From assembly GCA_002269645.1 (NCBI GenBank), contig NIVC01002207.1, forward strand, positions 46,402-110,401: DNA of 64,000 bases. The letters run 5' to 3'. Below the pieces are notes generated by a model. That model worked only from the letters and a program-made list of their open reading frames with translations, was not told the origin of the DNA and did not search any database. Position 1 is the stretch's first letter. Each line of letters opens with the position of its first letter. A program made the translations under genes and the position numbers. Source of the DNA: Macrostomum lignano (lineage: Eukaryota). Below, one piece after another: positions 3,143 through 55,300 of the stretch.

Positions 3143-3180
<38 letters not shown>

Positions 3181-29226: not shown

Positions 29227-32076
29227 TCACTTGGTGGCATTCATCAGCAGTGCGGCCGGTTGGCCCACGATGCTGTCCCAGAAGCCCGGCTCGAACATGG
29301 CCTGGCCGGCTGGCGACACTTCCGGTTTCTCCAGCCGCAGTTTCGAGGCCTCAAAGCCCGCATCCAGCAGCGCAGTCCGATAGGTTTCCCTGTGGTACCA
29401 GCGTAGCGGAATCCGCGTCTCCGTCGGGCTGGTGAACAGCACCAGGTTTATCTCGCTGCCGTCCACCGGATTGGCTGGCACCTCGTAGATTCCATTTACC
29501 TGCGATTTTTGCAGAGTGCGAAATTTTGCTTGTAAACATCGCGTCTGCCTTCTTTCAGCTTTACTCTCCCCCATCCTCGCCTTCCCTCATCATCGCCCTC
29601 CCTCATCCTCGCCTTCCCTCATCCTCGCCCTCCCTCATCCTCGCCCTCCCTCATCATCGCACTGCCCCTCACCTGGCGGCCAACCATCTCGCGGCTGAAA
29701 TCAACGCCCTGAAAGCAGTTTGGCAGGAAGCCGACAAGCCGGCCACCCGGCCTGAGCGCAGCGTAGATGTTGGCGCAGGTGCGGCGCAGCAGATCGACGT
29801 TGGCGTTGAATGGCAGCAGGAAGTTGGCCACGATCAGGTCGAATCTGTTCCTGCGGATTTGGTGGAAACGGTTTAGAACTGAAAACCAGACTGCCAGCTG
29901 TCATCAGTGAGAAAATCAAAATACTGAACCCTACCCTTTGCACTGCTGCCCCCTCATCCACAGAAGTTGCAGAAGTCTGCAGACTCCATCTTTACAGACT
30001 ACTCAAATTTGACAATCAATAGAAATCTTGAAATCCCAAGAGTCCCAATAATTATAAAATTATTGATACTTGAATTGAGATAAAGATAACAGACAAATGC
30101 GGAACTTAACTTGAAGGGCGTTCAGCTTGGGAAAAACAGGGTGCCAAATGGGCATCCGGGTTCCAAATTCAGGATGCAAAAAATTAAGTTGATGTGCCAT
30201 GACGCACGCTGTGACAAAAACCCAAGCTGGAAATCTGCAGGGATCTAGTTTTAATTTGATTTCAATTGGGTTGAAAATTCACCCTTACACGTATTAGCTA
30301 CTCCATTAGCCATCTTAGCTACTCCATTAGCCATCTTAGCTACTCCATTAGCCATCTTAGCTACCCCATTAGCCACCTTAGCTACTCCATTAGCCATCTT
30401 AGCTACCCCATTAGCCACCTTAGCTACCCTATTAGCCATCTTAGCTACCCCATTAGCCATCTTAGCCACTAGCTATCTTAGCTACCCAAGAAGCCATCTT
30501 AGCCATTAGCCATCTTAGCTACCCCATTAGCCACCTTAGCTACCCTATTAGCCATCTTAGCTACCCCATTAGCCATCTTAGCCACTAGCTATCTTAGCTA
30601 CCCAAGAAGCCATCTTAGCCATTAGCCATCTTAGCTACCCCATTAGCCACCTTAGCTACCCCATTAGCCACCTTAGCTACCCCATTAGCCACCTTAGCTA
30701 CCCCATTAGCCACCTTAGCTACCCCATTAGCCACCTTAGCTACCCCATTAGCCATCTTAGCTACCCCATTAGCCACCCTAGCTACCCAATTAGCCATCTT
30801 AGCTACCCCATTAGCCATCTTAGTTAATGACGGAATGTACGGCCATAAAATAAATTCCAGCATACAAACTAAATGAGAAAATTTTCACAACTGCAAATTA
30901 TGCTACTAACAGTAACGCAGCCGGAGCCCCGATCATATTTCTATGCAAGCAGTGTTGAGCATTGAGGGACCCACTAGCTATTCAGGAATTATTAACGAAT
31001 AAAACGCACACAGTATGTGAGTACTTAACCTGCATTAGCCACTCTTTCTCATTAAAAGTACTCAGTTGCCTGGCCAGCTTCTCTGTCTAACCGCCTAATA
31101 AATTACAGATAAATAAGGGGTGCAATAGAGGCGAAATTTAGAGTTCACCGCAGGCCACAATAGCCAGCAGGCAGTCACATGCTCAGGTGTGTTTATGTTG
31201 ACAGAAAACCTGCATTCATAGTTTTTTTCCGGCTTTGTTTGTACGCAAGCGTTTTTTCCGCGAAACCATTGAGTCGCCTTACTGTTTTTGCTTGGTCTCG
31301 AAAACAAATGCGTCGAAATCCGATATTTTATTGATATGACTGAATGAACCATTTCTCAAGGGAAGCTCACACCCGGCATGACAGACAGAATCTAGAATAT
31401 CCCATATCAGAATCTAGAATATCCCCATATCAGAATCTAGAATATCCCCATGTCAGAATCTAGAATATCCCCATGTCAGAATCTAGAATATCCCCATGTC
31501 AGAATCTAGAATATCCCCATGTCAGAATCTAGAATTTCCCATATCAGAATCTAGAATATTCCCATGTCAGAATCTAGAATATCCCATGTCAGAATCTAGA
31601 ATATCCCCATTTCAGAATCTAGAATATCCCATATCAGAATCTAGAATATCCCCATGTCAGAATCTAGAATATCCAATGTCAGAATCTAGAAAATCTCTGT
31701 CAGAGGAGACTCGTCTTTCAACACTGTCCCAGCACAATGGCACTGCAAGGATGCCTCACCTGTCGGGCAGTTCAGCGCAGTCCTCCACCCTGTACTCCAC
31801 CAGGCTGCTACCATTGTTGTAGACCTTGGCCAGGCTGATGGCATCGCCGGAGGCGTCGGTGGCTACGATGGCCGCCGGCGCCAGCTCGGCCAGCTTGCGC
31901 GTGTAGCAGCCCCAGCCGCAGCCGAGGTCCAGCACCTGGCAGCCAGCTAGGGAGTTGCCGATACTTTTCAACAGGCTGTACTCCTCGCAGTGGATGGCGA
32001 ACGGCGACGAGCGCTTGAAGGCCTGGTAGCGCTCGATGGCGAGCTGGGCAAAGTCTAACGGCGAGTTGTCGGTCAT
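29227..32076 (-). CDS. Class I SAM-dependent methyltransferase, ToxA (toxoflavin N-methyltransferase)-like. Exons 32076-31760, 29850-29673, 29499-29227; 255 aa
   Basis: Motif I VLDLGCGWG, post-I VATDAS, EYRVEDC, FDLIVANFLL, LRPGGRLVG; junctions AG|gtgag..cag|G (phase 2) and CAG|gtgag..cag|GTA (phase 0); 768 nt, open throughout. Confidence 0.92.
29570..29660. repeat. Short CATCCTCGCCCTCCCT tandem repeat in methyltransferase intron 2
   Basis: Direct reading, ~5-6 copies. Confidence 0.85.
30295..30822. repeat. 21-bp minisatellite (AGCTACCCCATTAGCCATCTT), methyltransferase intron 1
   Basis: ~25 copies; gives the spurious (KMANGVA)n ORFs. Confidence 0.95.
31387..31690. repeat. 23-bp minisatellite (CAGAATCTAGAATATCCCCATGT), methyltransferase intron 1
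   Basis: ~13 copies. Confidence 0.95.
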
Positions 32077-32287
32077 CTGGCACCGAGCTAGCAGCAGCTT
32101 TAGAACTGGAGCGACTGGTTCGCGCAACAGGCGACTACCGGAGCGACTTAGGCAGTGCATGAGCACCCAACCCTGGCCTGGCCCGTGGGATACTTATAAG
32201 CTAGGGGTTGCGGGTGGGGGGGGCGGGCGGGTCGGGGGGGGGGAGGATTCCTCAGGCTGTTTACCTATTTGATCGCAGCTCTAGAGA

Positions 32288-32341: not shown

Positions 32342-33215
32342 CTGGCTGATATCGAATCCGGAGGGCGGGACGCGTTTCTGCTTGCTTCAAAATCAAAGAT
32401 GCCGCGATAGCGAGAGAGAGAGGGGGGAAGGAGGGGGTGGGTGGCCATTTATGCAGCGTCCAACCAGCGCGGGCCACAGTATTTTGCTTTGGTTTCATTT
32501 TTCCATTTTCATGAAAAAAGTTTGTTAAAACCGGTCGCAAAATTTGACTAATTGGTAATATTAAATAATATCATTTGAGACGGGGCGCTTGTGTTAAGGT
32601 TGCCGATAAATCCGTTTGCACCGAGTTAACTTTGGAGTTGGGGGTCAGGCGGTAGCGGCGGTGATGAGCCGGCCTAGGTTCAATTACCTCGTAATTCAGC
32701 CCTAATTATTTGTGGGGGGGGGTTGAGGCGGCTGGGTCGCAGGGTGCAGGCACTTTTGGTTGGACGCACACCCACCCTCTTTCAAGCTGCGCGGCTGGAA
32801 TTGCACTTGAATTGTCGCGTTTTATCATTAACAACAATTAACTGTGGCTGGCGATTATGTATGCTCGCATGTATACACATCTATAATATACTGAATTATT
32901 GTGTAGCATATAACATGAACATTTAGTTACTGTGGTCCGTCCGTAGTCTAAGCGAATGTCAGCGGAAGAATCTTTCTTAGAAAATCTCGGCGAAACACGA
33001 AAGCGTATTTCAATAATCGGAAAAATCACTTCAAAATTGCTTGATTTCCTTTCTCTAAAGAAGAATGGTAAACTAATGATGTACTTCAGTAGCATATAAC
33101 TTTAGTTTATATAAACTCGATTCCCACAATGATGCTCTGCATCATTCCACAAACATCGGTGTACTACATGTGCATGTATAACACCCTTAAAATATATGTC
33201 CCGAAGATGTTGTCC

Positions 33216-33290
33216 CGCACATCTATCTGATGTCTATCTATCTATCTATCTATCTGATGTCTATCTATCTATCGATCTATCGATCTATCG

Positions 33291-33330
<40 letters not shown>

Positions 33331-33455
33331 GATGTCTATCTATCTATCGATCTATCGATCTATCGATCTATCTATCTATCTATCTATCTGATGTCTATCT
33401 ATCTATCGATCTATCGATCTATCGATCTATCTATCTATCTACCTATCTATCTGTG

Positions 33456-33499
<44 letters not shown>

Positions 33500-33519
33500 G
33501 ATCTATCTATCTGTCTATC

Positions 33520-33584
<65 letters not shown>

Positions 33585-33650
33585 GATGTCTATCTATCTA
33601 TCGATCTATCGATCTATCGATCTATCTATCTATCTACCTATCTATCTGTG

Positions 33651-33698
<48 letters not shown>

Positions 33699-33728
33699 GA
33701 TCTATCTATCTGTCTATCTATCTGTCTG

Positions 33729-33766
<38 letters not shown>

Positions 33767-33803
33767 CATCTATCTGTCTATCTATCTATCTATCTATCTG
33801 ATG

Positions 33804-33885
<82 letters not shown>

Positions 33886-33907
33886 CATCTATCGATCTAT
33901 ATATCTA

Positions 33908-33990
<83 letters not shown>

Positions 33991-33993
33991 GTG

Positions 33994-34030
<37 letters not shown>

Positions 34031-34080
34031 GGTTATCTATCTGTCATCTGTCTATCTATCATCTATCCATCTACATCTAC
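33216..34080. repeat. (TATC)n microsatellite, ~860 bp
   Basis: Direct reading; source of the LSIY ORFs. Confidence 0.98.
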
Positions 34081-34644
34081 ATGGCTCAATCACAGAAAAT
34101 GTCGGTGGCTATTGACTAGATTAAAAAGTTCTGTGCGCTACTAAAAGCCAATGTGTAAATGTCTCAGCTTCTTGAGAAGTGCTTCAAATGCGCAAACTAA
34201 TACAGATTCTACAGAATAGTTTGAAAGCTTTTTTCCGCTTTTTTCTCTCGTTCTCAAACTCTATTGAGCAGTCAATTGTTCTGCTATTCTCCTCTACTCA
34301 CTGGCGCTGCTCTAACTGGCCTGGGACGGCTTAAAGCAGAGATGCATGCGTCATCACGCAGTCTAATTTAGCAGATGCATGGCGACAGCAGGAGTGAAGT
34401 TCACAGAGGCAGAGGTAAAATAGAGATAGGGCTAATCTAGGTTGGTTGGTAACTTAAATGCATTTATAGGTGACTTGCTGTGTCAATGGAGCAAAGTACA
34501 TGTAAGTATAAAATGCAAAGATGCAACCCATGCAAAATGTCGGCAGCCCACTGAGTAATGTACGAGTATGTGCGAACATATTCACAATATTTACAAATGA
34601 AGTTCCTTAATAACTACGGAATCAATGGTTGAAGGCGTAATAAT

Positions 34645-37169: not shown

Positions 37170-38210
37170 AAGAGTCGTTCTCCCTCATATTCCAATCTCC
37201 CATACCTTATATCTCATTTTCCTATATCTCACATCTCACATATCATTCTCCTATATCTCATATCTCACTCTCCTATATCTCATATCTCACTCTCGTAGAT
37301 CTCATATCCCACTCTCCTGTATCTCACATCTCACTCTCCTATATCTCACATCTCACTCTCTTATGTCTCACTCTCACTCTCCTATATCTCATTTCATTCT
37401 CTTATATCTCATATCTCACTCTCCTATATCTCATCTCTCACTCTCGTAGATCTCATATCCCACTCTCCTGTATCTCACATCTCACTCTCCTATATCTCAC
37501 ATCTCACGCTCCTATATCTCACATCTCACACTCCTATATCTCACATCTCACGCTCCTATATCTCACATCTCACACTCCTATATCTCATATCGCATATCTC
37601 AATCTCCTATATCTCGCATCTCAGTCCTATATCTCACATCTCACTCTCCTATATCTTACATCTCACTCTCCTATATCTCACATCTCACTCTCTTATGTCT
37701 CACACCCACTCTCCTATATCTCACTCACCTATATCTCATTTCATTCTCCTATATCTCATATCTCACGCTCCTATATCTCATATCTCACGCTCCTATATCT
37801 CATATCTCACGCTCCTATATCTCATATCTCACGCTCCTATATCTCATATCGCATATCTCACTCTCCTTTATCTCACATTTCACATCTCACTCTCATATAT
37901 CACATCTCAATCTCTTATATCTCACATCTCACTCTCCTATTTCTCATCTCGCTCTCCTACATCCCATTACTCTCCTATATCTCATATCGCACATCTCGCT
38001 CTCATATAACTCATCTCACTCTCCTACATATCAGATCTCACTCACGTATATCTTATATCTCAACCTCCTATATCTTATATTTGCTGTATCTCATCTCACT
38101 CTTCTATGCCTCATATCTCATATTTCATATTTCATATCCCATGTCTAATTTCTTACACTTCTATATTTCGCATTCATATCTCTCAAAAACTCATATTCCA
38201 TACCTCATTT
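37170..38210. repeat. Degenerate ~22-bp CT/AT-rich minisatellite (TCTCACATCTCACTCTCCTATA)
   Basis: Direct reading; explains the SHIS/LLYL ORFs. Confidence 0.9.
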
Positions 38211-38306: not shown

Positions 38307-41300
38307 TCAGCGATTGGCCGCCGTCGTGGTCGCCGTCTTCGACACCGTTGACGATGTAGAGGAGGTCGCATTCTGCCTCGGCGATCGGCGAAGGCCTTTG
38401 CCGCCGGGCCGGTAGCTACTGGACTGCGAGTCCCCAGTTGATGGGGTCAGCCGCTCCAGCTGAAACAGACCGCCACTGCCGCCGCCGCCGCCGCCGCTCT
38501 CAAAGCCGTCCAGGGTCTTACGCAGCAGCTGCGCATGCTCCAAACGCATTCTGGGTCCGTCGGGCGAATTGGCCACCAACTCGGCGGTGGTCATTCTGGC
38601 CAACTGCTCGGTCCGGTTGATGCCAATGCGGGCAAACCTGTTGGCGTACTGGTTGAGGCCGATAAAGTGCAGCAAGTCGCTGGCATTGGTCGGATACAGC
38701 GACAGCTGCTGAGACTGCTGCTGCTTCTGGGGGGCATCGACACCCACTGCCTCCGTGGCCAGAGTGACCAGGCGGGGCTTGGCAGCTGAAGGCTGATGCG
38801 GCAGGCTGGCTGAGGCATCCGGCGCTGCGGAGACTTCGGTGGGCTGCAATGGTTCGGAGCGAATGACAGCGACATCAGTACCAATGGGAATGGGTGGGGT
38901 AGATGGTAGGGTGGATAGGGGTAGATGGTGGGGAGGATAGGGGTAGATGGTAGGGTGGATAGGGGTAGATGGTAGGGTGGATAGGGGTAGATGGTGGGGA
39001 GGATAGGGGTAGATGGTGGGAAGGATAAGGGGTAGATGGTAGGGAGGATAGGGGTAGATGTTGGGGAGGATAGGGGTAGATGGTGGGGAGGATAGGGGTA
39101 GATGGTGGGGAGGATAGGGGTAGATGGTGGGGAGGATAGGGGTAGATGGTGGGGAGGATAGGAGTAGATGTTGGGGAGGATAGGGGTAGATGGTGGGGAG
39201 GATAGGGGTAGATGGTGGGGAGGATAGGGGTAGATGGTGGGGAGGATAGGGGTAGATGGTGGGGAGGATAGGGGTAGATGGTGGGGAGGATAGGAGTAGA
39301 TGGTGGGGAGGATAGGGGTAGATGGTGGGGAGGATAGGGGTAGATGGTGGGGAGGATAGGGGTAGATGGTGGGGAGGATAGGGGTAGATGGTGGGGAGGA
39401 TAGGGGTAGATAGTAGGGTGGATAGGGGTAGATGGTAGGGTGGATAGGGGTAGATGGTGGGGAGGATAGGGGTAGATGGTAGGGCGGATAGGGGTAGATG
39501 GTAGGGAGGATAGGGGTAGATGGTAGGGCGGATAGGGGTAGATGGTAGGGCGGATAGGGGTAGATGGTAGGGCGGATAGGGGTAGATTCCGATGAAAACG
39601 GTGCCTAGGTCAAGATACATTCCACGCAGAGTCACTTGCGTCGCCCCAGAGTCATTTCAGAGTCGTTGCAGGCAACACAGGTAAAATACGAAAGGCGTCC
39701 GGAAAGTAGTGTTACTATATGATTTTTCGTTTGATTTCATAAAATTGTCATTTGATTTCGTCCATAGAAGTTGGCAGCGCGGCCATAGAGTCTATGGCAA
39801 TAAAGTGCGCTGTTTTCCAATTGAATTCATAACTTTGCCACTTCATTTCGACATACCCAGTAGAAAGGCAACAGAAAAGTCGGTGCGCTTGTCCAGTACA
39901 GAAAGAACTGTTAAAAACAGAAAGCTGTGTATTTAAGTCACATGAGGAAGTAGGCAGTTGCAACAGTGAAATCAGTTATGTCCGCCAAAGTTAATGCTCG
40001 TTCGCTGCAACAAGCTACAAATTTCACATTATCTGCTGCTCATTGATGCACAGGGGCAGAAACCGCATCACATGTCGTTCCCAGGCAAGGCAATTCGCGG
40101 CGGAAATTTCCTCTAGTGCAACGTAGCCGCAGCGGAAAAGCACCATGAGTCTCCACTGCGTTAGGTTGATGCCATCAGGCGGATTGCCAAGTTCCTGTTG
40201 AAGCTCAGGTGTTGCTAGCTGGCGTTTAAGCGAAGCCTTGAGACAACTGTGTGCCTGCTCCGCGGCGTTAAGAAATGGAGAATACGGTGGCAGAGTTCGC
40301 AGTTGAATACGATTGGCCGCGTTTATACGTTTCCAATGGACGCGTATGCAGCCATTTTTAGGCACACAAGGAAGGTGACTGTTGCCCAAGAAGAGGACAC
40401 GTTCATATAGGCTTTTCATTTCTATGAGAGGTTTGGCCATAGATATTCACCCACTGATATCCCAGCCCCCTCTGGCAGTGTTTGAGTCACTCCGCGCGTC
40501 AAGTCGAAATGAAGTGGCAAAGTTATGAATTCAATCGGAAAACAGCGCAGACTCTATGGCCGCGCTGCCAACTTCTATGGACGAAATTAAATGACAATTT
40601 TATCAAACGAAAAATCCTATATTACTTGGTGTGGACGTATGGAAAGTTGCACTTGCATGAGTTTGGTGTCATTTGAAAGCGGCAAGTCTCTTCTTTAAAA
40701 TGACGATTTTTCTCGCATGCATAAACTGTCTATGGCCAAATTCGATGCAGTAAATGAGAGGGGGCTGCCTCAGAAAACTAAGACTGCAGTTGCTGTGCTG
40801 AGTCAATAACAGTCTCGATCAATTGGAGAGCGAGGTTAGGAGGGTCCTGCTGAACCAGATTCCGAGAACTCTATACGCAGACGCCATCGACAAGATGCGA
40901 GACCGATGGGAGAAGTGCGTCATGTCTGGTGGTGACTACGTTTAGAAGACAACTCTGCCAACCGATGAGTGATTTTAACGTTGTTCGCTTGTATAACAAT
41001 TTTACTTGTTATCACCTGTTTCTTACTGTGCTTTTGTTGTGTTGTTTTGATTTTCTTGGAGTGATTAATAAAAGTTTTCTGCAGACACAGCTTGTGTAAG
41101 TCTATGACCGACCTTTCTCAACTTAATTATTCATATCTATTGAAGCACATATTCAAATCTCTTGCAATTGGTGTCATTTTAAAGAAGAGACTTGCCGCTT
41201 TCAAATGACACCAAACTCATGCAAGTGCAACTTCCCATACGTCCACACCGAGTAATAGTAACACTACCTTCCGGACGCTCCTCGTACAAAAGCAGTGACT

Positions 41301-44300
41301 CTAAACCGCTCTAAAATGACGAGATGTCGCGGTACAAGTCGCCAAGAAGTCGTCAAAGAGTCGCCTAAGGGTCAATTTTAAGGTTTTTATGTGTCTGCGA
41401 CTCAGGGGCCGTAGGGTCGTATCTGGGACGTGTCAGAGTCGCTGTAGAGTCACTGCGTTGCATTTAAAGTGCATCTGCGTCAATTAAATGAATGAGAATT
41501 GTACTTCCCATTTATATAACAACTCTATTAAGTTCACTTGAGTCAGTAGGAAGTTAAGCGCTAACATAACCATTTTCGGACAACTTTTTCGTAACTCTTT
41601 TACGATTCTGCCACTCACGCGATGCGCTTGTGATTCAACAGTCGCCCCTCGGTCGCATTTTAAGTCGAAAGAGTCGTTAAAAAAGTCACAAGAGTCGCCC
41701 CAGAGTCGCAGGTGGGTTCTTTGCAATGACCCTTCAGCGATTCTTGTCCCGTTTTCAACGTTTTCAACGGGGATGGTAGAACGGATAGAGGTAGATAGAG
41801 AGGGAATAGAAATAATTAGGCCAATTACAGGATTATAGCTCAAATAAGCTGTTTACAAAAAACAGCAATAAAATCTGCCTCGCACTGCATCGAGCAAAAG
41901 TACAATGAATTAGAGAACGCAGGGCTGTAAAAAATGAAACGAAGTCTGAGTATGTTTACAGCTGCTGTTAGTTCAAAGAACCCTTCCCTCAGCATAGAAA
42001 TTTAAATGTCCTAGCGTACTCAAAAACGTAGCACGTTTCACACTGCAAAATAACAAAATCCACCCCCGCTCCTAGACAGTCTACTATGAGTAGAAATGCA
42101 GGCTCAGCTCACCTCGTGTCTCACTATAATGGTTGGCTGGCTGGACAAAAGCGGAGGCGTGGGATGGGCAGCGGAACTGGCAGCCACAGCCGGCGCCGGC
42201 GCAGCCTGATGCTCTGGCTGCTGCTGCTGGAGGGACTGGCTAAGATTAAAACTCCAGCTGTTATTGGCTGTCCCAGTGCTGGGATTGGTAGAATTTGACA
42301 GCAGTCGCAGGAGCATGCCAAGCGTGTCAGTTCGATTAAGCGACTGCTGCTGCTGCTGCTGCTGCGACTGTTGCGACTGCTGCGACTGCTGCTGCTGTGA
42401 AGAAGTCGCTAACGGTACCGAAAGCATGGGATTGCCCAGCATGGGATTGCCGCTGCTGTCCGAGGACGAGCCCTGGCTGCTGCCAACAGGCGGGGTGGTC
42501 AGCCCCGAGGCGCCGAATAGCAGCTGCTGAGCCTGCCGATGGCCCTCTAGCAAACCTTGAAGCAGCAGGGCCCCGTACTTGGCGTGGAAGGCTGATTGGA
42601 AGTGAAGGCCGATAAAATTCGAATTCTCTTCGTAGGAGAGAATGACTGTCTCGCAGCCAAAGAGCAGCTGCTGCTGCTGTGGAGGAGGCGGTGGAGGCGG
42701 CGCTGGCTGCGGCGCTGGCTGCGGCGGCGGAGTCGGGGGCACCGAGTCGTCCTCAGGCGGCAGGGGGCGCTTCGTTCCTGCCAGCTTGCTGCTCTGATGC
42801 TGCGTTTTCTTCATGTGCGAACAGCCGGCTGGGCAGCCGATCTGCTCTTGGCTGAGCAGCTCGCACACCTCGGCAATGAGATCGCGGTACGGCGAGGCCA
42901 CGGCGCGGACGCGGAAGGCGAATCGGCCGGCGAATTGCCAGTCGCCTCGGCCAGCCGGAGCGGCCTCCAGGCAGACGGTGACGCAGATGCCCTTCTTGCT
43001 GCCGCGGTCGACGTGCGAGCTGGGGCAGGTGATGGTCATCGGCACAGACACGTCAGCCTGGCTGCTGTCGGGGTGCACCGGCGGGCTGACGGTCAGCAGG
43101 CCCAGCACGCTGCTGTCTCCCAGGCAGACGTACTGGGCCGCTGATGTCAACAGCAGAAGAGCGGAATTGTAGTGCGCGGACAGCGACTCGGGGCCGCGCT
43201 GTGCGTACACGGACCCGATTTTAGTCGGCAGCCGCCGGTTGCCGCTCTTCGAATTGGTGCCGTCATAGATGCCGCGCGCGTGGGCCTCGGCGCACTGGGC
43301 GCACTCGCGCAGGCTGGCCGACTTGTCGAAGATGAACACATTGAACACCATCCGGTATTGAAAGCGCCGATCGTAGCGGAAACTGCGGAATGAACATTGC
43401 TGCTCACACTGTCACCTCACTCCCTGTACCCCTGCTCTCACTGCCACCTCACTCCCTGTACCCCTGCTCTCACTGTCACCTCACTCCCTGTACCCCTGCT
43501 CTCACTGTCACCTCACTTCCTGTACCCCTGCTCACACTGTCACCTCACTTCCTGTACCCCTGCTCTCACTGTCACCTCACTCCCTGTACCCCTGCTCACA
43601 CTGTCACCTCACTTCCTGTACCCCTGCTCACACTGTCACCTCACTCCCTGTATCCCTGCTCACACTGTCACCTCACTCCCTGTATCCCTGCTCACACTGC
43701 CACCTCACTCCCTGTATCCCTGCTCACACTGCCACCTCACTCCCTGTATCCCTGCTCACACTGCCACCTCACTCCCTGTACCCCTGCTCACACTGCCACC
43801 TCACTCCCTGTACCCCTGCTCACACTGCCACCTCACTCCCTGTATCCCTGCTCTCACTGTTACCTCACTCCCTGTATCCCTGCTCACACTTTCACCTCAC
43901 TCCCTGTATCCCTGCTCACACTGCCACCTCACTCCCTGTATCCCTGCTCTCACTGTCACCTCACTCCCTGTATCCCTGCTCACACTTTCACCTCACTCCC
44001 TGTATCCCTGCTCACATTGCCACCTCACTCCCTGTATCCCTGCTCACACTGCCACCTCACTCCCTGTATCCCTGCTCACACTGCCACCTCACTTCCTGTA
44101 CCCCTGCTCACACTGCCACCTCACTCCCTGTATCCCTGCTCACACTGCCACCTCACTCCCTGTATCCCTGCTCACACTGCCACCTCACTCCCTGTATCCC
44201 TGCTCTCACTGTTACCTCACTCCCTGTATCCCTGCTCACACTTTCACCTCACTCCCTGTACCCCTGCTCACACTGCCACCTCACTCCCTGTATCCCTGCT

Positions 44301-45394
44301 CACACTTTCACCTCACTCCCTGTATCCCTGCTCTCACTGTCACCTCACTCCCTGTATCCCTGCTCACACTTTCACCTCACTCCCTGTACCCCTGCTCACA
44401 TTGCCACCTCACTCCCTGTATCCCTGCTCACACTGCCACCTCACTCCCTGTATCCCTGCTCACACTGCCACCTCACTTCCTGTACCCCTGCTCACACTGC
44501 CACCTCACTCCCTGTATCCCTGCTCACACTGCCACCTCACTCCCTGTATCCCTGCTCACACTGCCACCTCACTCCCTGTATCCCTGCTCACACTTTCACC
44601 TCACTCCCTGTATCCCTGCTCACACTTTCACCTCACTCTCTGTACCCCTGCTCACACTGCCACCTCACTCCCTGTATCCCTGCTCACACTTTCACCTCAC
44701 TCCCTGTATCCCTGCTCACACTGCCACCTCACTCCCTGTATCCCTGCTCTCACTGTTACCTCACTCCCTGTATCCCTGCTCACACTTTCACCTCACTCCC
44801 TGTACCCCTGCTCACACTGCCACCTCACTCCCTGTATCCCTGCTCACACTTTCACCTCACTCCCTGTATCCCTGCTCACACTTTCACCTCACTCCCTGTA
44901 CCCCTGCTCACACTGCCACCTCACTCCCTGTATCCCTGCTCACACTTTCACCTCACTCCCTGTATCCCTGCTCACACTGCCACCTCACTCCCTGTATCCC
45001 TGCTTACACTGCCACCTCACTCCCTGTATCCCTGCTCACACTGCCACCTCACTCCCTGTATCCAAGCTCAAAGGGTTACAAAAACTCTTTATATACAAGA
45101 ATACCTGGCCACCAGAGACACCTCGTCCATTGGTTTTAGCCAAAGTGTGGGTATCACATCCGGGTGCTTGAGTATCTGGCAGTGAGCGGAGGCCGTGGCG
45201 CTGACAAGAGCCTCCTGGATCAGGGCCTGGTCCTGCGCTGACCAGCCCACAAAACAGTGCGGCACGCTGCTGCTCTTATTAAACCGATCGTGCAGCGTGG
45301 CACCCAGACTGGCCCGATTCTTAATGTCCACCCGGAACTCGTAGCTGCCGGGGTCGTCCGCTGTTTTGAAATATTCCTCACAGTTGGCATGCAT
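38307..45394 (-). CDS. Divergent p53/p63/p73-family transcription factor with C-terminal SAM domain. Exons 45394(acceptor 45417)-45105, 43382-42113, 38843-38307; ~698 aa; 5' end uncertain
   Basis: Colinear matches to the p53 DBD: PGSYEFRVDI (QGSYGFRLGF), LRECAQC (VRRCPHH), ITCPSSHVDRGSKKGICVTVCLE ([22 protein letters not shown]), GRFAFRVRAVASPYRD (GRNSFEVRVCACPGRD), AGTKRPLP (GSTKRALP NLS); SAM-like LLHFIGLNQYANRFARIGINRTEQL. Splice phases are consistent (2, then 0). Confidence 0.85.
38895..39587. repeat. G-rich 22-bp minisatellite (GGGGAGGATAGGGGTAGATGGT), ~31 copies, in the last intron of the p53-like gene
   Basis: Direct reading; the degenerate unit resumes after 41772. Confidence 0.95.
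39687..41286 (+). mobile_element. Internally deleted mariner element with ~115-bp TIRs, nested in the CACTA-like element
   Basis: TACGA..GCGTCCGGAA.GTAGTGTTACTAT ends with TA; transposase C-terminal remnant LYADAIDKMRDRWEKCVMSGGDYV at ~40880-40945. Confidence 0.88.
39718..40619 (-). mobile_element. IS630/Tc1-family element (~135-bp TIRs, TA TSD) inserted in the left TIR of the mariner; DDE transposase C-terminal fragment at 40024-40440
   Basis: LPPYSPFLNAAEQAHSCLK motif; TIRs TA(T/G)GATTTTTCGTTTGAT...; TA duplication at 39716-17 and 40620-21. Confidence 0.9.
43400..45060. repeat. 32-bp minisatellite (CCTCACTCCCTGTATCCCTGCTCACACTGCCA), ~52 copies, filling an intron of the p53-like gene
   Basis: Direct reading; source of the 580-593-aa spurious ORFs. 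Confidence 0.97.
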
Positions 45395-45544
45395 GCTGAC
45401 GTGCTCTCTTTGCCCTTCTAGTTAATAGCAAGACAGAGATTAGGCTGGACAGAGATTAGGCTGTTTTGAAGGTCATTAAGAAAGCCAAAATTTGCTCTAC
45501 ACGATGCTCTACGCGATGAACGCGTTAATAAATACGGTATTATG

Positions 45545-45830
45545 GCTGTTGCTATGCGAACATTTGATGTTGCTAGGCTAAAATGGCTGTTTCTATGCGA
45601 ACATTTGATGTTGCTAGGCTCAAACGGCTATTGCTATGCGAAAATTTGATGTTGCTAGGCTCAAACGGCTATTGCTATGCGAACATTTGATGTTGCTAGG
45701 CTCAAACGGCTATTGCTATGCGAACATTTGATGTTGCTAGGCTCAAACGGCTATTGCTATGCGAACATTTGATGTTGCTAGGCTAAAACGGCTGTTGCTA
45801 TGCGAACATTGATGTTGCTAAGCTAATATT
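45545..45830. repeat. 41-bp minisatellite, ~7 copies
   Basis: GCTATGCGAACATTTGATGTTGCTAGGCTCAAACGGCTATT, period 41. Confidence 0.93.
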
Positions 45831-46314: not shown

Positions 46315-46557
46315 GTTGCTAAGCTACCATCCCAGTTGCTAAGCTACCAACCCAGCTGCTAAGCTACCAACCCTGTTGCTAAGCTACCAACCCAGTTGCT
46401 AACCCGCCAACGCAGTTGCTAAGCTACCATCCCAGTTGCTAAGCTACCATCCCAGTTGCTAAGCTACCATCCCAGTTGCTAAGCTACCAACACAGTTGCT
46501 AAGCTACCAACACAGTTGCTAACCCGCCAACGCAGTTGCTAAGCTACCATCCCAGTT
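46315..46557. repeat. 20-bp minisatellite (GTTGCTAAGCTACCATCCCA), ~12 copies
   Basis: Direct reading. Confidence 0.93.
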
Positions 46558-46647: not shown

Positions 46648-48099
46648 CTATAGCTCAAACAGGGCAGCCTGTGGCACTTGTCCGCGCAAAGCGTCGCGAA
46701 TCTGGTCCAAGCAGAGCCGCTGCATACTCAGCCGAGTCTGGCTCGTATGCGTGCCAAAGTGCGGCGTCACCCAGACGTTCAACCGGCTGTCGGACAGCAG
46801 CGGATGCTCGGCCGGCAGCGGCTCCGGCTCGGTGACGTCCAGCCCGGCAGCGGCGATGACGCCGGAGCGTAGGGCAGTCAGCAGAGCCTCCGTGTCGACG
46901 AGGCCGCCGCGGGCCACATTGATGAGGGTCGCAGTCGACCGCATCAGCCGCAGAGTGTCGGCATTGATCATGTGCCGCGTGTCCGGGCCGAGCGGACAGG
47001 CCAGCACTACGAAATCGCAGCGTGGCAGCAGGTCGGCCAGGCTGGCGCAGTACTGCAGCTGGCCGCCGAGCTCCAACTCGAGCTGCGGCTCGGCCCGGCG
47101 GCGCTGATAATAGTACAATCGGCAGCCGAAGCCCAGGCCGCAGCGGCGTGCTACGCAGCGGCCGATAGCGCCGAGGCCGACGATGCCGACGGTGGCGCCG
47201 GCGAGGTCGTTGCCAAGCGGCACAGCGGAACCGCCCCAGCTGGGCTGCTGGCCGGCCGGGGTGCGAATGTGTTCGAATACCTGGCGCTGACTGCGGGCCG
47301 TGTTCAGAATGTGCAGCAGGGCGGCGTCGGCGGTGGACTCGGCTATAACGCCGGGCGTGTGCGTTACTAGGATACGGCGAGATCTGCAAATAAAAATGCA
47401 GATAAGAGTTTTCTTGAGAATTTATCTAATTCTTACAAACGATGGAAACACAACTGGCAGTGCCGTAGCAGCAGGACTATCAAGGAGAGAATCAGTAGCA
47501 GGCTAGTAGAATTCACGGATGCAGGGATAGACCTAGACGGGAAACTTGATTTCTAAGAAAATCTTTTTTGAAGGCTGACATTTCGCGGAAATGCACTACC
47601 GAGAGATGCTCATTTCAAATGCAGAGGCATGAAAGGCACCAAAACAGGTATTAGGGCACCAAAACAGGCATTAGGGCACCAAAACAGGCATTAGGGCACC
47701 AAAACAGGCATTAGGGCACCAAAACAGGTACTAGGGCACCAAAACAAGCATAGAGGTATTTAAATCAGGCATTAGAGGAGCGAAAATATCCATAAATTGA
47801 TTTATAAACAGATTGAGGTGTATTTCTCACCTAAACATCTCCTGATTGATGTGCTCAACTCCAACGCCGTGATTGGCTGCAATTTTCAAATTCGGCAGCC
47901 GATCCAGCACTTCGGGGCAATCAATATAATTGGCCACCACGCAGATGACAGCGGCCGAGATTTCCGGCCACTGCCGCTGCGGCTCTGACTCAAATTCGTC
48001 AGTTGTCACTAAGCGAAAATGGCGCCCAGCTTCGGCTAGGAATTCGGGCAACAATAAGCCGCTCCGCTTGGGGATGAGCAGGCCGGGCAGCTCAGCCAT
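46648..48099 (-). CDS. D-2-hydroxyacid dehydrogenase, glyoxylate/hydroxypyruvate reductase (GRHPR)-like. Exons 48099-47831 and 47383-46648; 334 aa
   Basis: Motifs NHGVGVEHI, VTHTPGVIAESTAD, GIVGLGAIG (Rossmann fold), LINVARGGLVD, AGLDVTEPEPL, TPHFGT; junction AG|gtgag..cag|A (phase 2). Confidence 0.95.
47635..47748. repeat. 20-bp repeat (GGCACCAAAACAGGCATTAG) in the dehydrogenase intron
   Basis: ~5-6 copies. Confidence 0.9.
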
Positions 48100-49045: not shown

Positions 49046-49924
49046 TTTACTTCCATGGGAACTATACATACTCATACACAGCTTTTAACACTACAAATTA
49101 AAAGAATGGAAGTCAGCAGTTAATGCTAGGTTTGAAAATGTCAGACATTTCTTCTTGTACAAAGCGCGCCTGACACTTGCATTTTATTGACTGAAAAAAT
49201 CTAACAACACGGCGAGTTAAATAAAACGAACGCTGTCACAAGAACACAAATAGGTGAAAAGAAACAATTTCTGTAAAAATGGGAAAAAAGAAACAAGCAT
49301 AAACAATAAGAAATGAGCATTTTCATAAGCACAGTAGGACTATTAATACCAAAAACTCCGTTCGCATGCTATGAAACATGGAATTTCTAATGAAATAAAC
49401 GGAGAGCTATAAGTAGTATATGACGATTACAAAATAGCCAACTAAACTCTATCGAGAGATTGTTTAAACATAATAACTACATTATTTAGATAATCTACCA
49501 GGTGAAAAAGATGATAAAATAAAAATGCTTCAACGCAGCGCTTTAAAACATAAATTATGTGCGATACGTGTTTTGTTCAGCAATCTTTTTTTATTATTAC
49601 AAAGTACGGCAAGACATCAATCGGCAACGACACTTGCGAATGCGCAAATAATATTGACAATGCAAAATGCAAAATCTGTGTTTTGGCTCAAGCAGCTGAC
49701 GAGTGAAATTAGCACCTTTTCAAGACTAATATTGCTTGCAGTCTTGTAAAAAGTCATAAAATATTTAATGATATGAAATGACATCACATATTTAATAATT
49801 AATAAAGGAGCAAAGGCAGAGTTTCCCAGCACTTTTTTACAGTGGTGAGCATTCTTGTAGGGCTTGGGAAGTAAATTGGATTGAAACGTAAGTAAAAAAG
49901 TAAAAGCAATTAAGGGGCTGTCAG

Positions 49925-50222
49925 GGGGTGTGTACATTGAAGTGGTGGGCTGCCAAGGGCGTGTGTACATTGGGGTGGTGGGCTGCCAAGGGCGTGTGTA
50001 CATTGGGGTGGTGGGCTGCCAAGGGCGTGTGTACATTGGGGTGGTGGGCTGCCATGGGTGTGTACATTGGAGTTGTGGGCTGCCAAGGGTGTGTACATTG
50101 GGGTGGTGGGCTGCCAAGGGTGTGTACATTGGGGTGGTGGGTTGCCAAGGGCGTGTACATTGGGGTGGTGGGCTGCCAAGGGTGTGTGTACATTGGGGTG
50201 GTGGGCTGTCAAGGGCATGTGT
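49925..50222. repeat. 31-33-bp G-rich minisatellite (GTGTACATTGGGGTGGTGGGCTGCCAAGGGC), ~9 copies
   Basis: Direct reading. Confidence 0.94.
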
Positions 50223-52310: not shown

Positions 52311-55300
52311 TCAGTGCGACCGGAGGCGGCCGCTGACAGTCGAGACGAAGGCTGCCGACATTGGAGAGCCGCCGCTGGCGCCAACGCTGACACTGAGGTT
52401 GCGACTGGCGCCGTCGCCGCGCCGAGTCACGGAGACGCGCAGCGCCCTACGACTGGCTGCTGGCTGCTGCCGAAGTTGCTGCTGCTGCTGTTTCAATTGC
52501 TTGAGATTCTGCTTCCGCTGTTGCTGGTGCCTGGTCAGTTGAGGAACACTAGCCCTGCTGGGAACCATGGCAACGGCTGAGGAGTCGCCGCGACAATTAT
52601 CAAACAGTTGCAGCGGCGGTGGCGGCGGCGGCGACGAGGAAGAAGACGACGACGGCGCGTGCGGCTGGTGCAGCGGCGGCGGGGATGAGGAGGAGTCCAG
52701 CGGGCCGAGCAGCGAGGCGATGTCAGCCAGGTCGGCAGCGCAGTCAACACTGTCGGAAGCCGGGGGCAGCTGGAACAGGTCGGCTGGCAGCAGCGACATG
52801 AGGTCGGAGGAGAGCTCACCGGACAGCTGGTCGGCGCCATCGACGGTTAGCTGGCTAAGCGACGATTCTGTAGCTGCTGGGGGCGTCGGCGTCGGCGGCG
52901 GCGGCAGGGACGCCGATTCGCTAACTGGCGGCGTCGGGGCTGTATTGAATGGAAAATCAAATATCAGATAGTTTAATCATAACACAGATCGCCTACTGAA
53001 AAGTAGCGAGAAAAGAATTTTAAGCAACTGTTTTATAGTCTGTACAAAAAGTATATCTACATCATTGGCCGCGACTGTGCAAACAAAATTAGAACAAACC
53101 CGGGGAGCTTGTCCGGCATTTCCAAGAGCCTCTGCTGGTTAGTAGTCAGATTGAAAATGACCAGCTATTTTTAAGTTACGAAATCATTTTTTCTACTTTT
53201 AGGTTTCACAGTCCACAGACCGAAATTTCGCAAACGCCTAAAAAGACGTCCCGGTGTTTTCGTGATGTACCACTAGTAAGTGAAATTCAACAGATGCTCA
53301 GCTCTTAAACGGCTCATATTTGTCTTACTAAACATACGTATGTAAAAACGCAGGTAGGTAAGATTCGTGAGAACTTCATATTATACAATTGTCTACTGAT
53401 GTCTCTATCGGTCATGTTGGGCCTACGGCAATTGACTGCTACAGATTGAACTGCCACCCTAACCCTAAACTAACCTAAAGCTCCTGGTCAAGTTTGTGTG
53501 GCACTTTGGTGTAGGCATTAAATAACATGAAATAAAACATGATTAATAGTTTCCATAGCAGCGATACAAATGAAGGCGAAACCAGTAAGCACGAGGGAGT
53601 AAAAATTATATTTTATAAAATGACTAAAACTAAGTTACTAGGAATTCTGGGTACAGTGGGGACAATATTCAGACAATGGATCAAATTTAAAGGCTTACAT
53701 GTAGATCATTAGTATGCTTATAGTGCAAAGATTGCATCACAACCTGTGCATCTACCTGCGGCGCCTTAGACATGACATTAAACAATCAATAACTGCATGC
53801 ACACTTGAAATATCATTAAAACACTCGTTCCATTTTCGCACCTGTATAATAATTTAAGCAGAATCAAACTAGGAAAATTAAGCTACAATAAATAAAACAA
53901 AGTAAATAAATGGAGAGCTGCGAACTTGGAATATACCAAAAGAAAATAAAAATTTCCCTCTATACAATACAAATATCTTAGGATCGGCGACCAAATAGTA
54001 GAAATTGTCTCAGTCTTTTCTAGGCAGATTTTTGAGTCTATATAATATGGCCTGTATAGGATAACCACTGTCTCTTATTATGGAATATATATTGCTACTA
54101 AAAATGACTGTGATAAATACAATAATAGCATGATTTTGCTCAGCCGGCATCGCAGTCGGCAATCAGGCCAGCCAAATAGCTCGAGTCCGGCTGGAACTGA
54201 GAACAGGCAGCCACCGACAGATAATTGGCGCTGCGATACTTTTGGTACACGAATCGGTGCTGATGATGATCCTGATGGGGATGCTGGTGCGCGACTCGCG
54301 CCACCAGCCGCGGCTCTGAGCACGGCGCGAGCCAGGCTGGCGCAGACTGAGCGCAGTGACTCAGCTGAGTAGCCAGAGTAGAAAGCCAGCTGTTTGGACC
54401 AATCTCGCAATTCTGAGCCAAGCGAAACTCTTAGAGCGCCGGCGGCCAGCCGACTGGCCGGCAGGCAGGACAGCTCGGTGCTGAGCGTGGCCAGCTCCAG
54501 CAGGTATTTGGCAATAAAGTGCAGCCGATTATCGACGCCGGCTACTTTGGACAGTCGGCGCAGAAAGGTAATTGGCAGCGGAGGAAGCAGGTGAAAATCA
54601 AGCGCGCCAACCAGGCGAGTCTCAATAGTCAGCAGATCGCGCCGGCCACAGGCGCCGGCGCAGACGTGCAGGAGGTCGCCAAGGCTGATGCAGTAGACCT
54701 CTTCGAGCTTGGAGGCCAGCCAGAGCGCAGCAGCGCCCAGCGACTGCAACTGGTGCTTGGCTAAACACGAATCAACAGCCAGGTAGTGGTCTAGCAGGCG
54801 TACGGACAGGTGGAAAGTGTCCGATTGAAGCTCAAATCTGCCGCTCAATTGAAGCAGCCAATCGACTAGACAGCGCGAGATCGTTCAGTAATCTCGGCGT
54901 GTCCAGACAGTAGATTATTCGGCAAGGTGTAAGCTAATTCCCGTTCAGCCAGGTACACAAAGATGTCCTTAGCGTAGGCAGTTACCATGGTGCAGTGGCC
55001 TCGTTGATCAGCGTCTGGCACGTCAGCTGGCAGAGTCGCTGATCGATCCAAGCAGGGCAGCCTGCTTGGCTCAGCTGGTGCAACCTCCACCGTAGATGTG
55101 GAGTCGGCCTCAGCGACTTTAACATCGGACTTGCATGTATTGTCATTCTTATTACCTGTAGCTTTCTGACAAACAGAGCGGCGCAGCGACTGTTGCTGGC
55201 TATTGTTGGAGCACTGCCTTAGCGGCTCTCTAACAGGCTGCTGTCGACGTTTCCCGTTGATTTGCTGCTGAGAATCTTTTTGATTGACCGGCTGACTAAT

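What the first reader, a model, noticed from the sequence alone, without database searches (positions are those of the whole stretch)
38307..45394. Hidden, highly divergent p53/p63-family gene with a SAM domain
It is not evident from the ORF track because three exons are split by a 1.7-kb minisatellite and a transposon nest. The stitched protein shows, in order, the p53 DBD strands, an NLS (AGTKRPLP), a possible oligomerisation segment (NFIGLHFQSAFHAKYGALLLQGL), a Q/S-rich linker and a SAM-like domain, which is p63/p73 architecture. DNA-contact equivalents R273, R280 and D281 are kept; R248/R249 are K/K, C277 is S and R175 is E. It is divergent enough to be missed by routine annotation and may be a lineage-specific paralog with altered DNA specificity.
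Basis: partly seen in the sequence, partly recalled or inferred. Interest (0 to 1): 0.85.

Follow-up and report, generated by a model that had tools for sequence, protein, structure and literature searches.

The report
Divergent flatworm p53-like gene with SAM
This is a real, transcribed three-exon gene of the flatworm Macrostomum lignano. It most likely encodes a very divergent member of the p53/p63 transcription-factor family with a SAM-like tail. Public databases hold the gene model only as a 'hypothetical' or 'SAM domain-containing' protein.

Summary
Three minus-strand exons (45394-45105, 43382-42113, 38843-38307) join through GT-AG sites in matching phases into a 698-aa ORF. Intron 1 is almost entirely a 1.7-kb minisatellite. 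Intron 2 holds nested transposon remnants and a second minisatellite.

The gene is not hidden. The stitched protein is identical to GenBank PAA59970.1 / UniProt A0A267EEJ4 of Macrostomum lignano, from a transcriptome-derived annotation. It carries no p53 label.

p53 homology is supported only below annotation thresholds:
- Pfam P53 and PDB sequence searches find nothing for this protein.
- BLASTP against human p53 gives E 0.002 in the correct register.
- hhalign against p53/p63 profiles gives E 1.6e-4 for the C-terminal half (above all 250 column shuffles) and E 0.008 for the N-terminal motif, collinear.
- Its only relative among 1.84 billion representatives, an M. lignano paralog (E 7e-10), hits Pfam P53 as its sole family (E 3.6e-4, 20.9 bits, cutoff 27).
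- R273, R280, D281 and C238 equivalents are kept. R248/R249 are K/K, C242 is H and C277 is S.

The SAM domain is likely but below threshold. The oligomerisation domain is unsupported. There is no N-terminal transactivation domain.

Verdict: a probable new, highly divergent p53-family member (confidence about 0.8), of moderate interest.

The parts
45105..45394 (-). Exon 1: ATG at 45394, residues 1-96 plus 2 nt of codon 97. It carries the start-of-DBD motif TADDPGSYEFRVDI (45364-45323) and HCQILK, which aligns with p63 YCQIAK.
   Evidence: The donor is GCCAG|GTATTC. hhalign of the N-terminal half against the p53 N-half gives E 0.0076, above all 80 shuffles. MAFFT alignment.
43383..45104 (-). Intron 1 (1722 nt), almost wholly a 32-bp minisatellite (43400-45070, 52 copies, 94% matches).
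42113..43382 (-). Exon 2: residues 97-520. It holds the rest of the DBD-like region, a basic GTKRP motif, a Pro-rich tract, the proposed (unsupported) oligomerisation segment and a Q/S-rich linker.
   Evidence: Acceptor TTCCGCAG|T, donor CACGAG|GTGAGC.
42848..43144 (-). C-terminal half of the p53-like DBD (residues 177-275). L3-like TCPSSHVDRGSKKG spans 43033-42989. The S10/H2-like FRVRAVASPYRDLIAEV spans 42916-42866.
   Evidence: BLASTP against human p53 gives E 0.002. hhalign gives E 3.3e-4 and 1.6e-4. Column-shuffle control: 38.5 against a maximum of 30.4 in 250 shuffles. Residue map.
43271..43309 (-). L2-like segment RECAQCAEAHARG (residues 122-134), with candidate zinc ligands C124, C127 and H131.
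   Evidence: The register relative to human C176/H179 is ambiguous.
42812..42844 (-). Lineage-specific motif QIGCPAGCSHM (GCxxGCxH) just after the H2-like helix. It is conserved in the paralog P0002 as QMGCRMGCGHL.
42758..42781 (-). Basic motif AGTKRPLP (residues 298-305). It sits at the same position after the DBD as p63 GDGTKRPF and p53 GSTKRALP (the nuclear-localisation region).
42551..42667 (-). Proposed oligomerisation segment LLFGCETVILSYEENSNFIGLHFQSAFHAKYGALLLQGL (residues 336-374). It is not supported by any test.
   Evidence: No Pfam P53_tetramer hit. hhalign against a p53/p63 alignment that includes the OD finds nothing.
38844..42112 (-). Intron 2 (3269 nt). It holds nested inverted-repeat transposon remnants (39687-41286), a DDE_3 transposase fragment (40024-40440) and a 22-bp x 31 minisatellite (38896-39587).
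38307..38843 (-). Exon 3: residues 521-698 plus the stop codon (38309-38307).
   Evidence: Acceptor CCATTGCAG|CCC, phase 0, matching the phase 0 donor of exon 2.
38484..38696 (-). SAM-like domain (residues about 570-640; the Pfam-matched core is 575-609, at 38681-38577).
   Evidence: Pfam SAM_2 gives E 0.0095 and 16.5 bits (cutoff 20.5); SAM_EPH and SAM_1 hit the same stretch. The best PDB sequence hit is the SHIP2/EphA2 SAM at E 0.087. UniRef names the protein 'SAM domain-containing protein'.

Best explanation
The locus is an intact, transcribed three-exon gene of Macrostomum lignano. It encodes a 698-aa, highly divergent member of the p53/p63/p73 transcription-factor family.

Shown:
- The gene structure and its identity to a public transcript-based model.
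- Weak but reproducible, collinear similarity to the p53 DNA-binding domain in two separate parts.
- A divergent paralog in the same species that matches Pfam P53.

Inferred domain layout:
- The protein starts almost directly with the DBD, so it is DeltaN-like with no N-terminal transactivation domain.
- The DBD folds as a p53-type beta-sandwich.
- A zinc site would be built from C216 and H220 (the C238 and C242 equivalents) plus Cys/His of the L2-like loop (C124 or C127, and H131).

Inferred mechanism:
- DNA contact would run through the kept R256/R263-D264 set (R273, R280, D281) in the S10/H2 region.
- A lysine (K226) would replace the minor-groove arginine R248.
- A GTKRP basic motif would direct nuclear import.
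- Pro- and Gln-rich tracts could supply activation function.
- The C-terminal SAM-like domain would mediate protein-protein interaction, as in p63alpha and p73alpha.

By analogy with planarian Smed-p53 and schistosome p53-1, the likeliest role is control of stem-cell progeny or epidermal-lineage differentiation. A genotoxic-stress role is the alternative. This functional step is pure inference.
For: Gene model:
- GT-AG junctions with matching phases give a 2097-nt CDS.
- The product is identical to PAA59970.1 / A0A267EEJ4.
- The GenBank annotation of Mlig_3_7 was built from genome-guided RNA-seq transcripts (PMC5730564).

Homology:
- BLASTP against human p53 gives E 0.002, with residues 184-304 aligned to 206-323 in the correct register.
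- hhalign of this protein plus its paralog against human p53/p63/p73 gives E 3.3e-4.
- hhalign against 23 vertebrate p53/p63 gives E 1.6e-4 and probability 50%. The score is 38.5, against a column-shuffled mean of 15.7, SD 3.0 and maximum 30.4 in 250 shuffles. The reversed control scores 12.2.
- The N-terminal half taken alone gives E 0.0076 on TADDPGSYEFRVDI against human residues 99-115, above all 80 shuffles.
- An HMM built here from vertebrate p53/p63 scores the DBD at 9.6 bits, above all 1000 shuffles (maximum 4.9).
- Paralog P0002 matches at phmmer E 7e-10 in 1.84 billion representatives and BLASTP 1e-16. It hits Pfam P53 as its only family at E 0.0053, or E 3.6e-4 and 20.9 bits for the domain alone.
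- MAFFT gives a full collinear alignment that keeps Y107, F109, C135, Y205, C238, L257, E258, G266, R267, F270, R273, A276, P278, R280, D281 and E285.
- The MSA-guided AF2 model finds only p53, p63 and p73 DBDs among the top 50 PDB hits. This is partly circular.

SAM: three SAM Pfam models hit the same stretch below cutoff. PDB SAM domains are the best sequence hits. UniRef uses the name 'SAM domain-containing protein'.
Against: - Pfam P53 gives no hit at E<=10 for this protein, whole or in parts.
- PDB phmmer and a two-sequence profile find no p53 chain.
- phmmer over 1.84 billion representatives finds no recognised p53 of any animal.
- hhalign probabilities are only 38-50%.
- The paralog's Pfam score is below the gathering cutoff (20.9 against 27).
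- Single-sequence AF2 was uninformative: pLDDT 33.7, with meaningless Foldseek hits.
- The MSA-guided model has pLDDT 51.9, and its p53 fold is expected from the p53-containing alignment.
- No tetramerisation domain was detected.
- The SAM region shows no BLASTP similarity to the p63 SAM.
- The L2 zinc ligands cannot be placed unambiguously.
- The L1 lysine (K120), R282 and R283 are not kept.
Confidence: 0.8

Rival explanations
1. This is a lineage-specific protein unrelated to p53. It would be a novel beta-rich domain joined to low-complexity linkers and a SAM-like domain, and its p53-like motifs would be chance or convergence.
For: No standard profile or sequence search links this protein itself to p53. 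All positive statistics are weak, with E values from 1e-4 to 1e-2 in single comparisons chosen after the hypothesis was formed. The structure evidence is uninformative or circular.
Against: Two separate segments match the p53 profile in the correct order, and each beats all shuffles. The paralog independently picks Pfam P53 as its only hit out of 24,736 families. The kept residues are the structurally and functionally critical ones. A GTKRP motif and a C-terminal SAM sit where p63 has them.
Confidence: 0.1
2. This is a p53-derived gene that has lost canonical function: a decaying or neofunctionalised duplicate that no longer binds p53 response elements. It could act as a SAM-mediated scaffold or a dominant-negative partner.
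For: Divergence is extreme even from its own paralog, at 27% identity. K120, R282, R283, C275 and C277 are lost, and there are long insertions in the L1/L2 regions. No TAD or detectable OD is present. M. lignano carries extensive recent genome duplication (PMC5730564).
Against: The 698-codon ORF is intact across three exons with canonical splice sites, and it is represented in a transcript-based annotation. The residues most critical for base contact and the fold (R273, R280, D281, C238, G266/R267) are kept in both paralogs, which argues for purifying selection on DNA binding.
Confidence: 0.1

Closest known systems
Vertebrate p63/p73 alpha isoforms, especially DeltaNp63alpha (Pfam P53 PF00870 + P53_tetramer PF07710 + SAM_2 PF07647)
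   Same: The order of features matches: DBD, a basic GTKRP-type motif, a long linker and a C-terminal SAM-like domain. The DBD starts with a D-x-PG-x-x-x-F-x-V motif. MCNSSC and ACPGRD are recognisable as TCPSSH and ASPYRD. R273, R280, D281 and C238 are kept. There is no N-terminal TAD, as in the DeltaN isoforms.
   Different: Identity across the DBD is about 23-25%. It falls below Pfam detection. There are large insertions after S1, in L1 and in L2. C242 is H, R248/R249 are K/K, and C275 and C277 are V and S. No tetramerisation domain is detectable. The SAM is not specifically p63-like. An extra GCxxGCxH motif follows H2. The Pro- and Gln-rich tracts are longer.
Flatworm p53 homologs: Smed-p53 (planarian) and Schistosoma mansoni p53-1 / p53-2 (Wendt et al. 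2022, PMC9478680)
   Same: They belong to the same phylum. Flatworm p53 genes are known to be divergent and to have duplicated. They are linked to stem-cell progeny, epidermal or tegument differentiation, and (p53-2) genotoxic stress.
   Different: If those proteins are in that library, this gene is far from them. That paper reports p53-2 as absent from the 19 free-living flatworm genomes and transcriptomes it examined. No paper found here mentions this gene.
M. lignano paralog A0A1I8GLG0 (P0002, 486 aa; UniRef name 'START domain-containing protein')
   Same: It shares the DBD-like region (27% identity over 184 aa, E 1e-16). That includes the L3 C-x3-H, the GR..FR.R..SP.RD block and the GCxxGCxH motif.
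   Different: P0002 is closer to canonical p53, with a Pfam P53 score of 20.9 bits. It carries an FDYYVQLYG stretch that, compared with my recalled p73 sequence TYYLQVRG, resembles the oligomerisation strand. Its model lacks the segment equivalent to residues 98-124 and has no SAM. It may be an incomplete prediction, and no encoding contig was on record.

Membership tests
p53/p63/p73 family (Pfam P53, PF00870) | The DNA-binding domain matches the curated family profile at or above the gathering score (27 bits). | tested here: not met
   No hit at E<=10 for the whole protein, the 309-aa DBD region or its halves. The paralog P0002 reaches 17.1-20.9 bits, E 0.005 to 3.6e-4, which is still below the cutoff.
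p53/p63/p73 family | Remote homology to the DBD by profile-profile comparison, collinear over the domain and better than controls. | tested here: met
   hhalign gives E 3.3e-4 and 1.6e-4 (probability 38-50%) for residues 177-275. The score beats 250 of 250 column shuffles with z about 7.5. The N-terminal motif gives E 0.0076 and beats 80 of 80 shuffles. BLASTP against human p53 gives E 0.002. The support is weak in absolute terms.
p53/p63/p73 family | Zinc ligands equivalent to C176, H179, C238 and C242. | tested here: inconclusive
   C238 maps to C216 and C242 to H220, with C-x3-H in both paralogs. The L2-like loop has C124, C127 and H131, but their register is ambiguous: MAFFT instead aligns RRLPTK with RRCPHH. 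Metal binding was not tested.
p53/p63/p73 family | DNA-contact residues K120, S241, R248, R273, A276, C277, R280 and R283. | tested here: inconclusive
   Kept: S241 (S219), R273 (R256), A276 (A259) and R280 (R263), together with D281 (D264). Changed: K120->P, R248->K, C277->S, R283->I. The core major-groove Arg is kept and the peripheral contacts are not.
p53/p63/p73 family | The p53-type immunoglobulin-like beta-sandwich fold. | tested here: inconclusive
   Single-sequence AF2 gave pLDDT 33.7 and no meaningful Foldseek hits. AF2 with an alignment containing p53/p63 sequences gave pLDDT 51.9 and pTM 0.53. Its top 50 PDB hits are all p53, p63 or p73 DBDs, with target-normalised TM 0.40-0.55. 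That result is partly circular.
p53/p63/p73 family | A tetramerisation domain (PF07710) after the DBD. | tested here: not met
   No Pfam hit for residues 336-390. hhalign against a p53/p63 alignment that includes the OD gives nothing.
p63/p73 alpha-type architecture | A C-terminal SAM domain. | tested here: inconclusive
   SAM_2 scores 16.5 bits against a cutoff of 20.5 (E 0.0095), and SAM_EPH and SAM_1 hit the same stretch. SAM domains are the top PDB sequence hits at E 0.087 to 1. UniRef names the protein 'SAM domain-containing'. There is no BLASTP similarity to the p63 SAM.
p53/p63/p73 family | An N-terminal transactivation domain (TA isoforms). | tested here: not met
   Only about 10 residues precede the DBD-start motif. 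The upstream same-strand gene (2-Hacid_dh) ends 1.25 kb away at 46648, which leaves little room for further 5' exons. The gene is DeltaN-like.
p53/p63/p73 family | Sequence-specific binding to RRRCWWGYYY-type half-sites and transcriptional regulation. | not testable with these tools
   This needs EMSA, SELEX, PBM or ChIP. One preprint reports a p53-type motif as a marker of epidermal-lineage chromatin shared across species in a study of three flatworms that included M. lignano (PMC11398382). The factor responsible is not identified.

The most novel reading that the evidence does not exclude
M. lignano, an early-branching rhabditophoran flatworm, retains the ancestral p63-like layout (DBD plus C-terminal SAM) in a gene family that has diverged beyond the reach of profile annotation. 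The family has duplicated into at least two 27%-identical paralogs. It has gained a conserved GCxxGCxH motif after helix H2, possibly a second metal site, together with a Cys-to-His swap in the L3 zinc ligand. If these are the only p53-type genes of the species, they would be the factors behind the p53-type motif seen in flatworm epidermal-lineage chromatin. They would then show how far a functional p53 DBD can drift while keeping the R273/R280/D281 core.
Probability: 0.25. Interest if true: 0.6.

Novelty: new member of a known kind. Interest (0 to 1): 0.45.

Why it matters
p53-family genes in flatworms are studied for their roles in stem-cell differentiation, regeneration and genotoxic stress. 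Which function is ancestral is still debated (PMC9478680). M. lignano is the transgenic flatworm model, yet no p53-type gene of this species was found in the literature searched here.

Recognising this locus and its paralog as p53-like gives two concrete candidates for RNAi or transgenic tests. It suggests that a SAM-bearing, p63-like form persisted in basal flatworms. It also marks a family that automated pipelines label only as 'hypothetical' or 'SAM domain-containing'.

The gain is incremental. It is a missing functional label on an already known gene model, not a new kind of system.

Tried and rejected
1. Pfam scans of each exon ORF, of the stitched protein and of sub-domains found no P53 or P53_tetramer hit.
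2. PDB phmmer and profile searches with the DBD, with the two-paralog profile and with P0002 found no p53. The only hits were chance ones (ribosomal L19, HPPD).
3. The search for homologous proteins with residues 1-397 found nothing, not even the protein itself. The candidate list was probably swamped by Pro/Gln low-complexity words. The two-paralog profile returned only P0002.
4. The last homolog search, with human p53/p63/p73, listed only vertebrate proteins. No flatworm or other invertebrate p53 could be retrieved. A phylogeny, and a check for a canonical p53 in M. lignano, were therefore impossible.
5. Single-sequence AF2 and Foldseek were uninformative.
6. The encoding contig of P0002 was not on record.
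7. Rfam and tRNA scans of the window found nothing.
8. The vertebrate-only HMM built here scores P0002 poorly (-1.3 bits), although Pfam's broader model scores it at 17-21 bits. This shows how strongly the result depends on the profile used.
9. A global hhalign of the N-terminal half did not beat the shuffles. Only the local motif did.
10. The supplement of Wendt et al., which lists the p53-1 orthologs, is not held.


Full report
**What is there**

The window is eukaryotic. The target region holds three long minus-strand open segments separated by repeats. Reading the junctions gives these sites:
- Exon 1 ends at a GCCAG|GTATTC donor, at 45105.
- Exon 2 starts after a TTCCGCAG| acceptor, at 43382.
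- Exon 2 ends at a CACGAG|GTGAGC donor, at 42113.
- Exon 3 starts after a CCATTGCAG| acceptor, at 38843.

The phases match: two bases plus one at the first junction, and phase 0 at the second. The joined CDS is 2097 nt, or 698 codons, with no internal stop.

Intron 1 (1722 nt) is almost entirely a 32-bp x 52 minisatellite.

Intron 2 (3269 nt) holds:
- nested inverted-repeat elements at 39687-41286;
- a DDE_3 transposase remnant;
- a 22-bp x 31 minisatellite that ends about 50 bp before exon 3.

**Identity of the locus**

A full HMMER scan of 1.84 billion representative proteins returned a 698-aa protein that is 100% identical over the 309 residues searched. Its sequence equals my stitched model residue for residue.

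It is GenBank PAA59970.1 (BOX15_Mlig030740g1, 'hypothetical protein') and UniRef100_A0A267EEJ4 ('SAM domain-containing protein') of Macrostomum lignano.

The GenBank annotation of that assembly was derived from genome-guided RNA-seq transcripts, not from ab initio prediction (PMC5730564). The link between the SAM exon and the DBD exons therefore has transcript-level support.

The gene is not hidden or missed. What is missing is any p53 label. No paper in the searchable library mentions it.

An older UniRef entry, A0A1I8HBP9 (945 aa), fuses it to the upstream same-strand 2-hydroxyacid dehydrogenase gene.

**Is it a p53-family protein?**

Standard tests fail:
- Pfam P53 gives no hit at E<=10 for the whole protein or its parts.
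- phmmer and a two-sequence profile find no p53 chain in the PDB.
- The all-database phmmer finds no annotated p53.

More sensitive and controlled tests point the other way.

1. BLASTP against human p53 aligns residues 184-304 with 206-323 at E 0.002. The register pairs C238, RR/KK, FEVRVCACPGRD/FRVRAVASPYRD and the STKR/GTKR motif. The p63 sequence was verified against PDB 2rmn.

2. hhalign of this protein plus its paralog gives E 3.3e-4 against human p53/p63/p73. It gives E 1.6e-4 (probability 50%) against 23 vertebrate p53/p63 sequences. The score of 38.5 exceeds all 250 column-shuffled controls (mean 15.7, SD 3.0, maximum 30.4) and the reversed control at 12.2.

3. The N-terminal half alone matches the start of the DBD: TADDPGSYEFRVDI against human residues 99-115. 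E is 0.0076, above all 80 shuffles. This is a second, collinear and independent signal.

4. An HMM I built from vertebrate p53/p63 scores the DBD at 9.6 bits, against a maximum of 4.9 in 1000 shuffles.

5. The only relative found anywhere is an M. lignano paralog, A0A1I8GLG0 (P0002). It matches at E 7e-10 database-wide and 27% identity over 184 aa. P0002 hits Pfam P53 as its sole family: E 0.0053 for the whole protein, and E 3.6e-4 with 20.9 bits for the domain alone, covering profile positions 92-189 of 193. That is still below the 27-bit cutoff.

6. MAFFT with p53/p63 gives a collinear alignment over the whole domain.

Residue mapping:

| Status | Human residue -> residue here |
|---|---|
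| Kept | Y107, F109, C135, Y205, C238, S240, S241, L257, E258, G266, R267, F270, R273, A276, P278, R280, D281, E285 |
| Changed | C242->H, R248/R249->K/K, C275->V, C277->S, R282->L, R283->I, K120->P |

The L2 register is ambiguous. C124, C127 and H131 are candidate zinc ligands, but MAFFT prefers a different placement. 'R175 = E' therefore cannot be confirmed.

**Structure**

- Single-sequence AF2 was useless (pLDDT 33.7), and its Foldseek hits were generic beta-sandwiches.
- With an alignment that includes p53/p63 sequences, the model reaches only pLDDT 51.9 and pTM 0.53.
- All top 50 PDB matches to that model are p53, p63 or p73 DBDs, with target-normalised TM 0.40-0.55.
- Because the alignment contained p53 sequences, this shows compatibility with the fold and is not independent proof.

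**Other domains**

- SAM region. It hits SAM_2, SAM_EPH and SAM_1 at one place, all below cutoff; the best is 16.5 bits against 20.5. SAM domains are the top PDB sequence hits at E 0.087 to 1. UniRef calls the protein SAM domain-containing. There is no specific similarity to the p63 SAM. I judge the SAM likely.
- Proposed oligomerisation segment. It has no support.
- N-terminal transactivation domain. There is none. The DBD motif starts at residue 11, and the upstream gene ends 1.25 kb away.

**Interpretation**

The most likely reading (about 0.8) is a genuine but extremely divergent p53-family gene with a DeltaN-p63alpha-like layout.

Inferred mechanism:
- a zinc-stabilised beta-sandwich;
- major-groove contact through the R263/D264/R256 set;
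- a lysine in place of the minor-groove arginine;
- nuclear import through GTKRP;
- protein-protein interaction through the SAM.

By analogy with Smed-p53 and schistosome p53-1 (PMC9478680), a role in stem-cell progeny or epidermal differentiation is the best guess. One preprint reports a p53-type motif as a marker of epidermal-lineage chromatin shared across species, in a study of three flatworms that included M. lignano (PMC11398382). It does not name the factor.

Rivals, each at about 0.1:
- chance resemblance in an unrelated lineage-specific protein;
- a p53-derived gene that has lost canonical DNA binding.

**Limits**

- I could not retrieve any flatworm or invertebrate p53 sequence. The last homolog search listed only vertebrates.
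- As a result, orthology, the existence of a canonical p53 in M. lignano and the 'lineage-specific paralog' claim are all untested.

**Verdict**

- Observation: confirmed.
- Interpretation: partly supported.
- Novelty: a new, unlabelled member of a known family.
- Interest: moderate.

Noticed in passing
window 42812-42844 (-); P0002 residues about 366-378: A GCxxGCxH motif (QIGCPAGCSHM in this protein, QMGCRMGCGHL in the paralog) lies directly after the H2-like helix and is invariant between the two 27%-identical paralogs. It has no counterpart in the vertebrate p53/p63 sequences aligned here. It may be an extra metal-binding site.
   Followed up: partly
window 45376-45394 and 46648-46680 (-): UniRef A0A1I8HBP9 (945 aa) is a fusion model. 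It splices the last exon of the upstream 2-hydroxyacid dehydrogenase (donor CAA|GTGCCA near 46678) to an AG acceptor just before GAATAT, giving ...RGQ|EYFK... and skipping the MHANCE start. [quoted passage not shown] This AG may be a trans-splice acceptor, so the true N-terminus is uncertain.
   Followed up: partly
P0002 (A0A1I8GLG0) residues about 397-405: The paralog carries FDYYVQLYG shortly after its DBD. Compared with my recalled p73 and p53 sequences (TYYLQVRG and EYFTLQIRG), it resembles the oligomerisation beta-strand. After that point the model looks like read-through, and it also lacks the segment equivalent to residues 98-124 of the window protein. It is probably an incomplete prediction.
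   Followed up: no
window 46648-47223 (-) and upstream: The same-strand neighbour encodes a D-isomer-specific 2-hydroxyacid dehydrogenase of the glyoxylate/hydroxypyruvate reductase type (Pfam 2-Hacid_dh_C, E 1e-51). It corresponds to PAA59971.1.
   Followed up: yes
window 19593-26456 (+): Exons of an RNA polymerase Rpb2-type second-largest subunit (Pfam RNA_pol_Rpb2 domains 1, 2, 4, 5 and 6) are interrupted by repeat-rich introns.
   Followed up: partly
window 54078-55534 (-), 31756-32166 (-), 2812-3411 (+), 5573-6747 (-): Other genes or fragments in the window: a cyclin (Cyclin_N plus Cyclin_C), a class I methyltransferase exon, the last transmembrane region of a Cys-loop neurotransmitter-gated channel, and an RNase H-like (RVT_3) retroelement fragment.
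   Followed up: partly
window-wide, e.g. 1496-2027, 19227-19721, 24967-25833, 33196-34115, 37233-38075, 38896-39587, 43400-45070, 45544-45824, 46315-46557, 49617-50129, 59705-60361: Minisatellite arrays with 20-41-bp units (those measured) are very frequent in introns and intergenic DNA. They create long spurious ORFs with periodic peptides on both strands. They are a general hazard for ORF-based reading of this genome.
   Followed up: partly
window 39687-41286: Intron 2 holds nested terminal inverted repeats: 39687-39718 with 41255-41286, 39730-39852 with 40503-40612, and 40620-40704 with 41173-41257. They surround a DDE_3 (Tc1/mariner-type) transposase remnant. A short ORF ending ...RWEKCVMSGGDYV looks, from my memory of mariner transposases, like a mariner transposase C-terminus. 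This points to several DNA transposons inserted into one another.
   Followed up: partly
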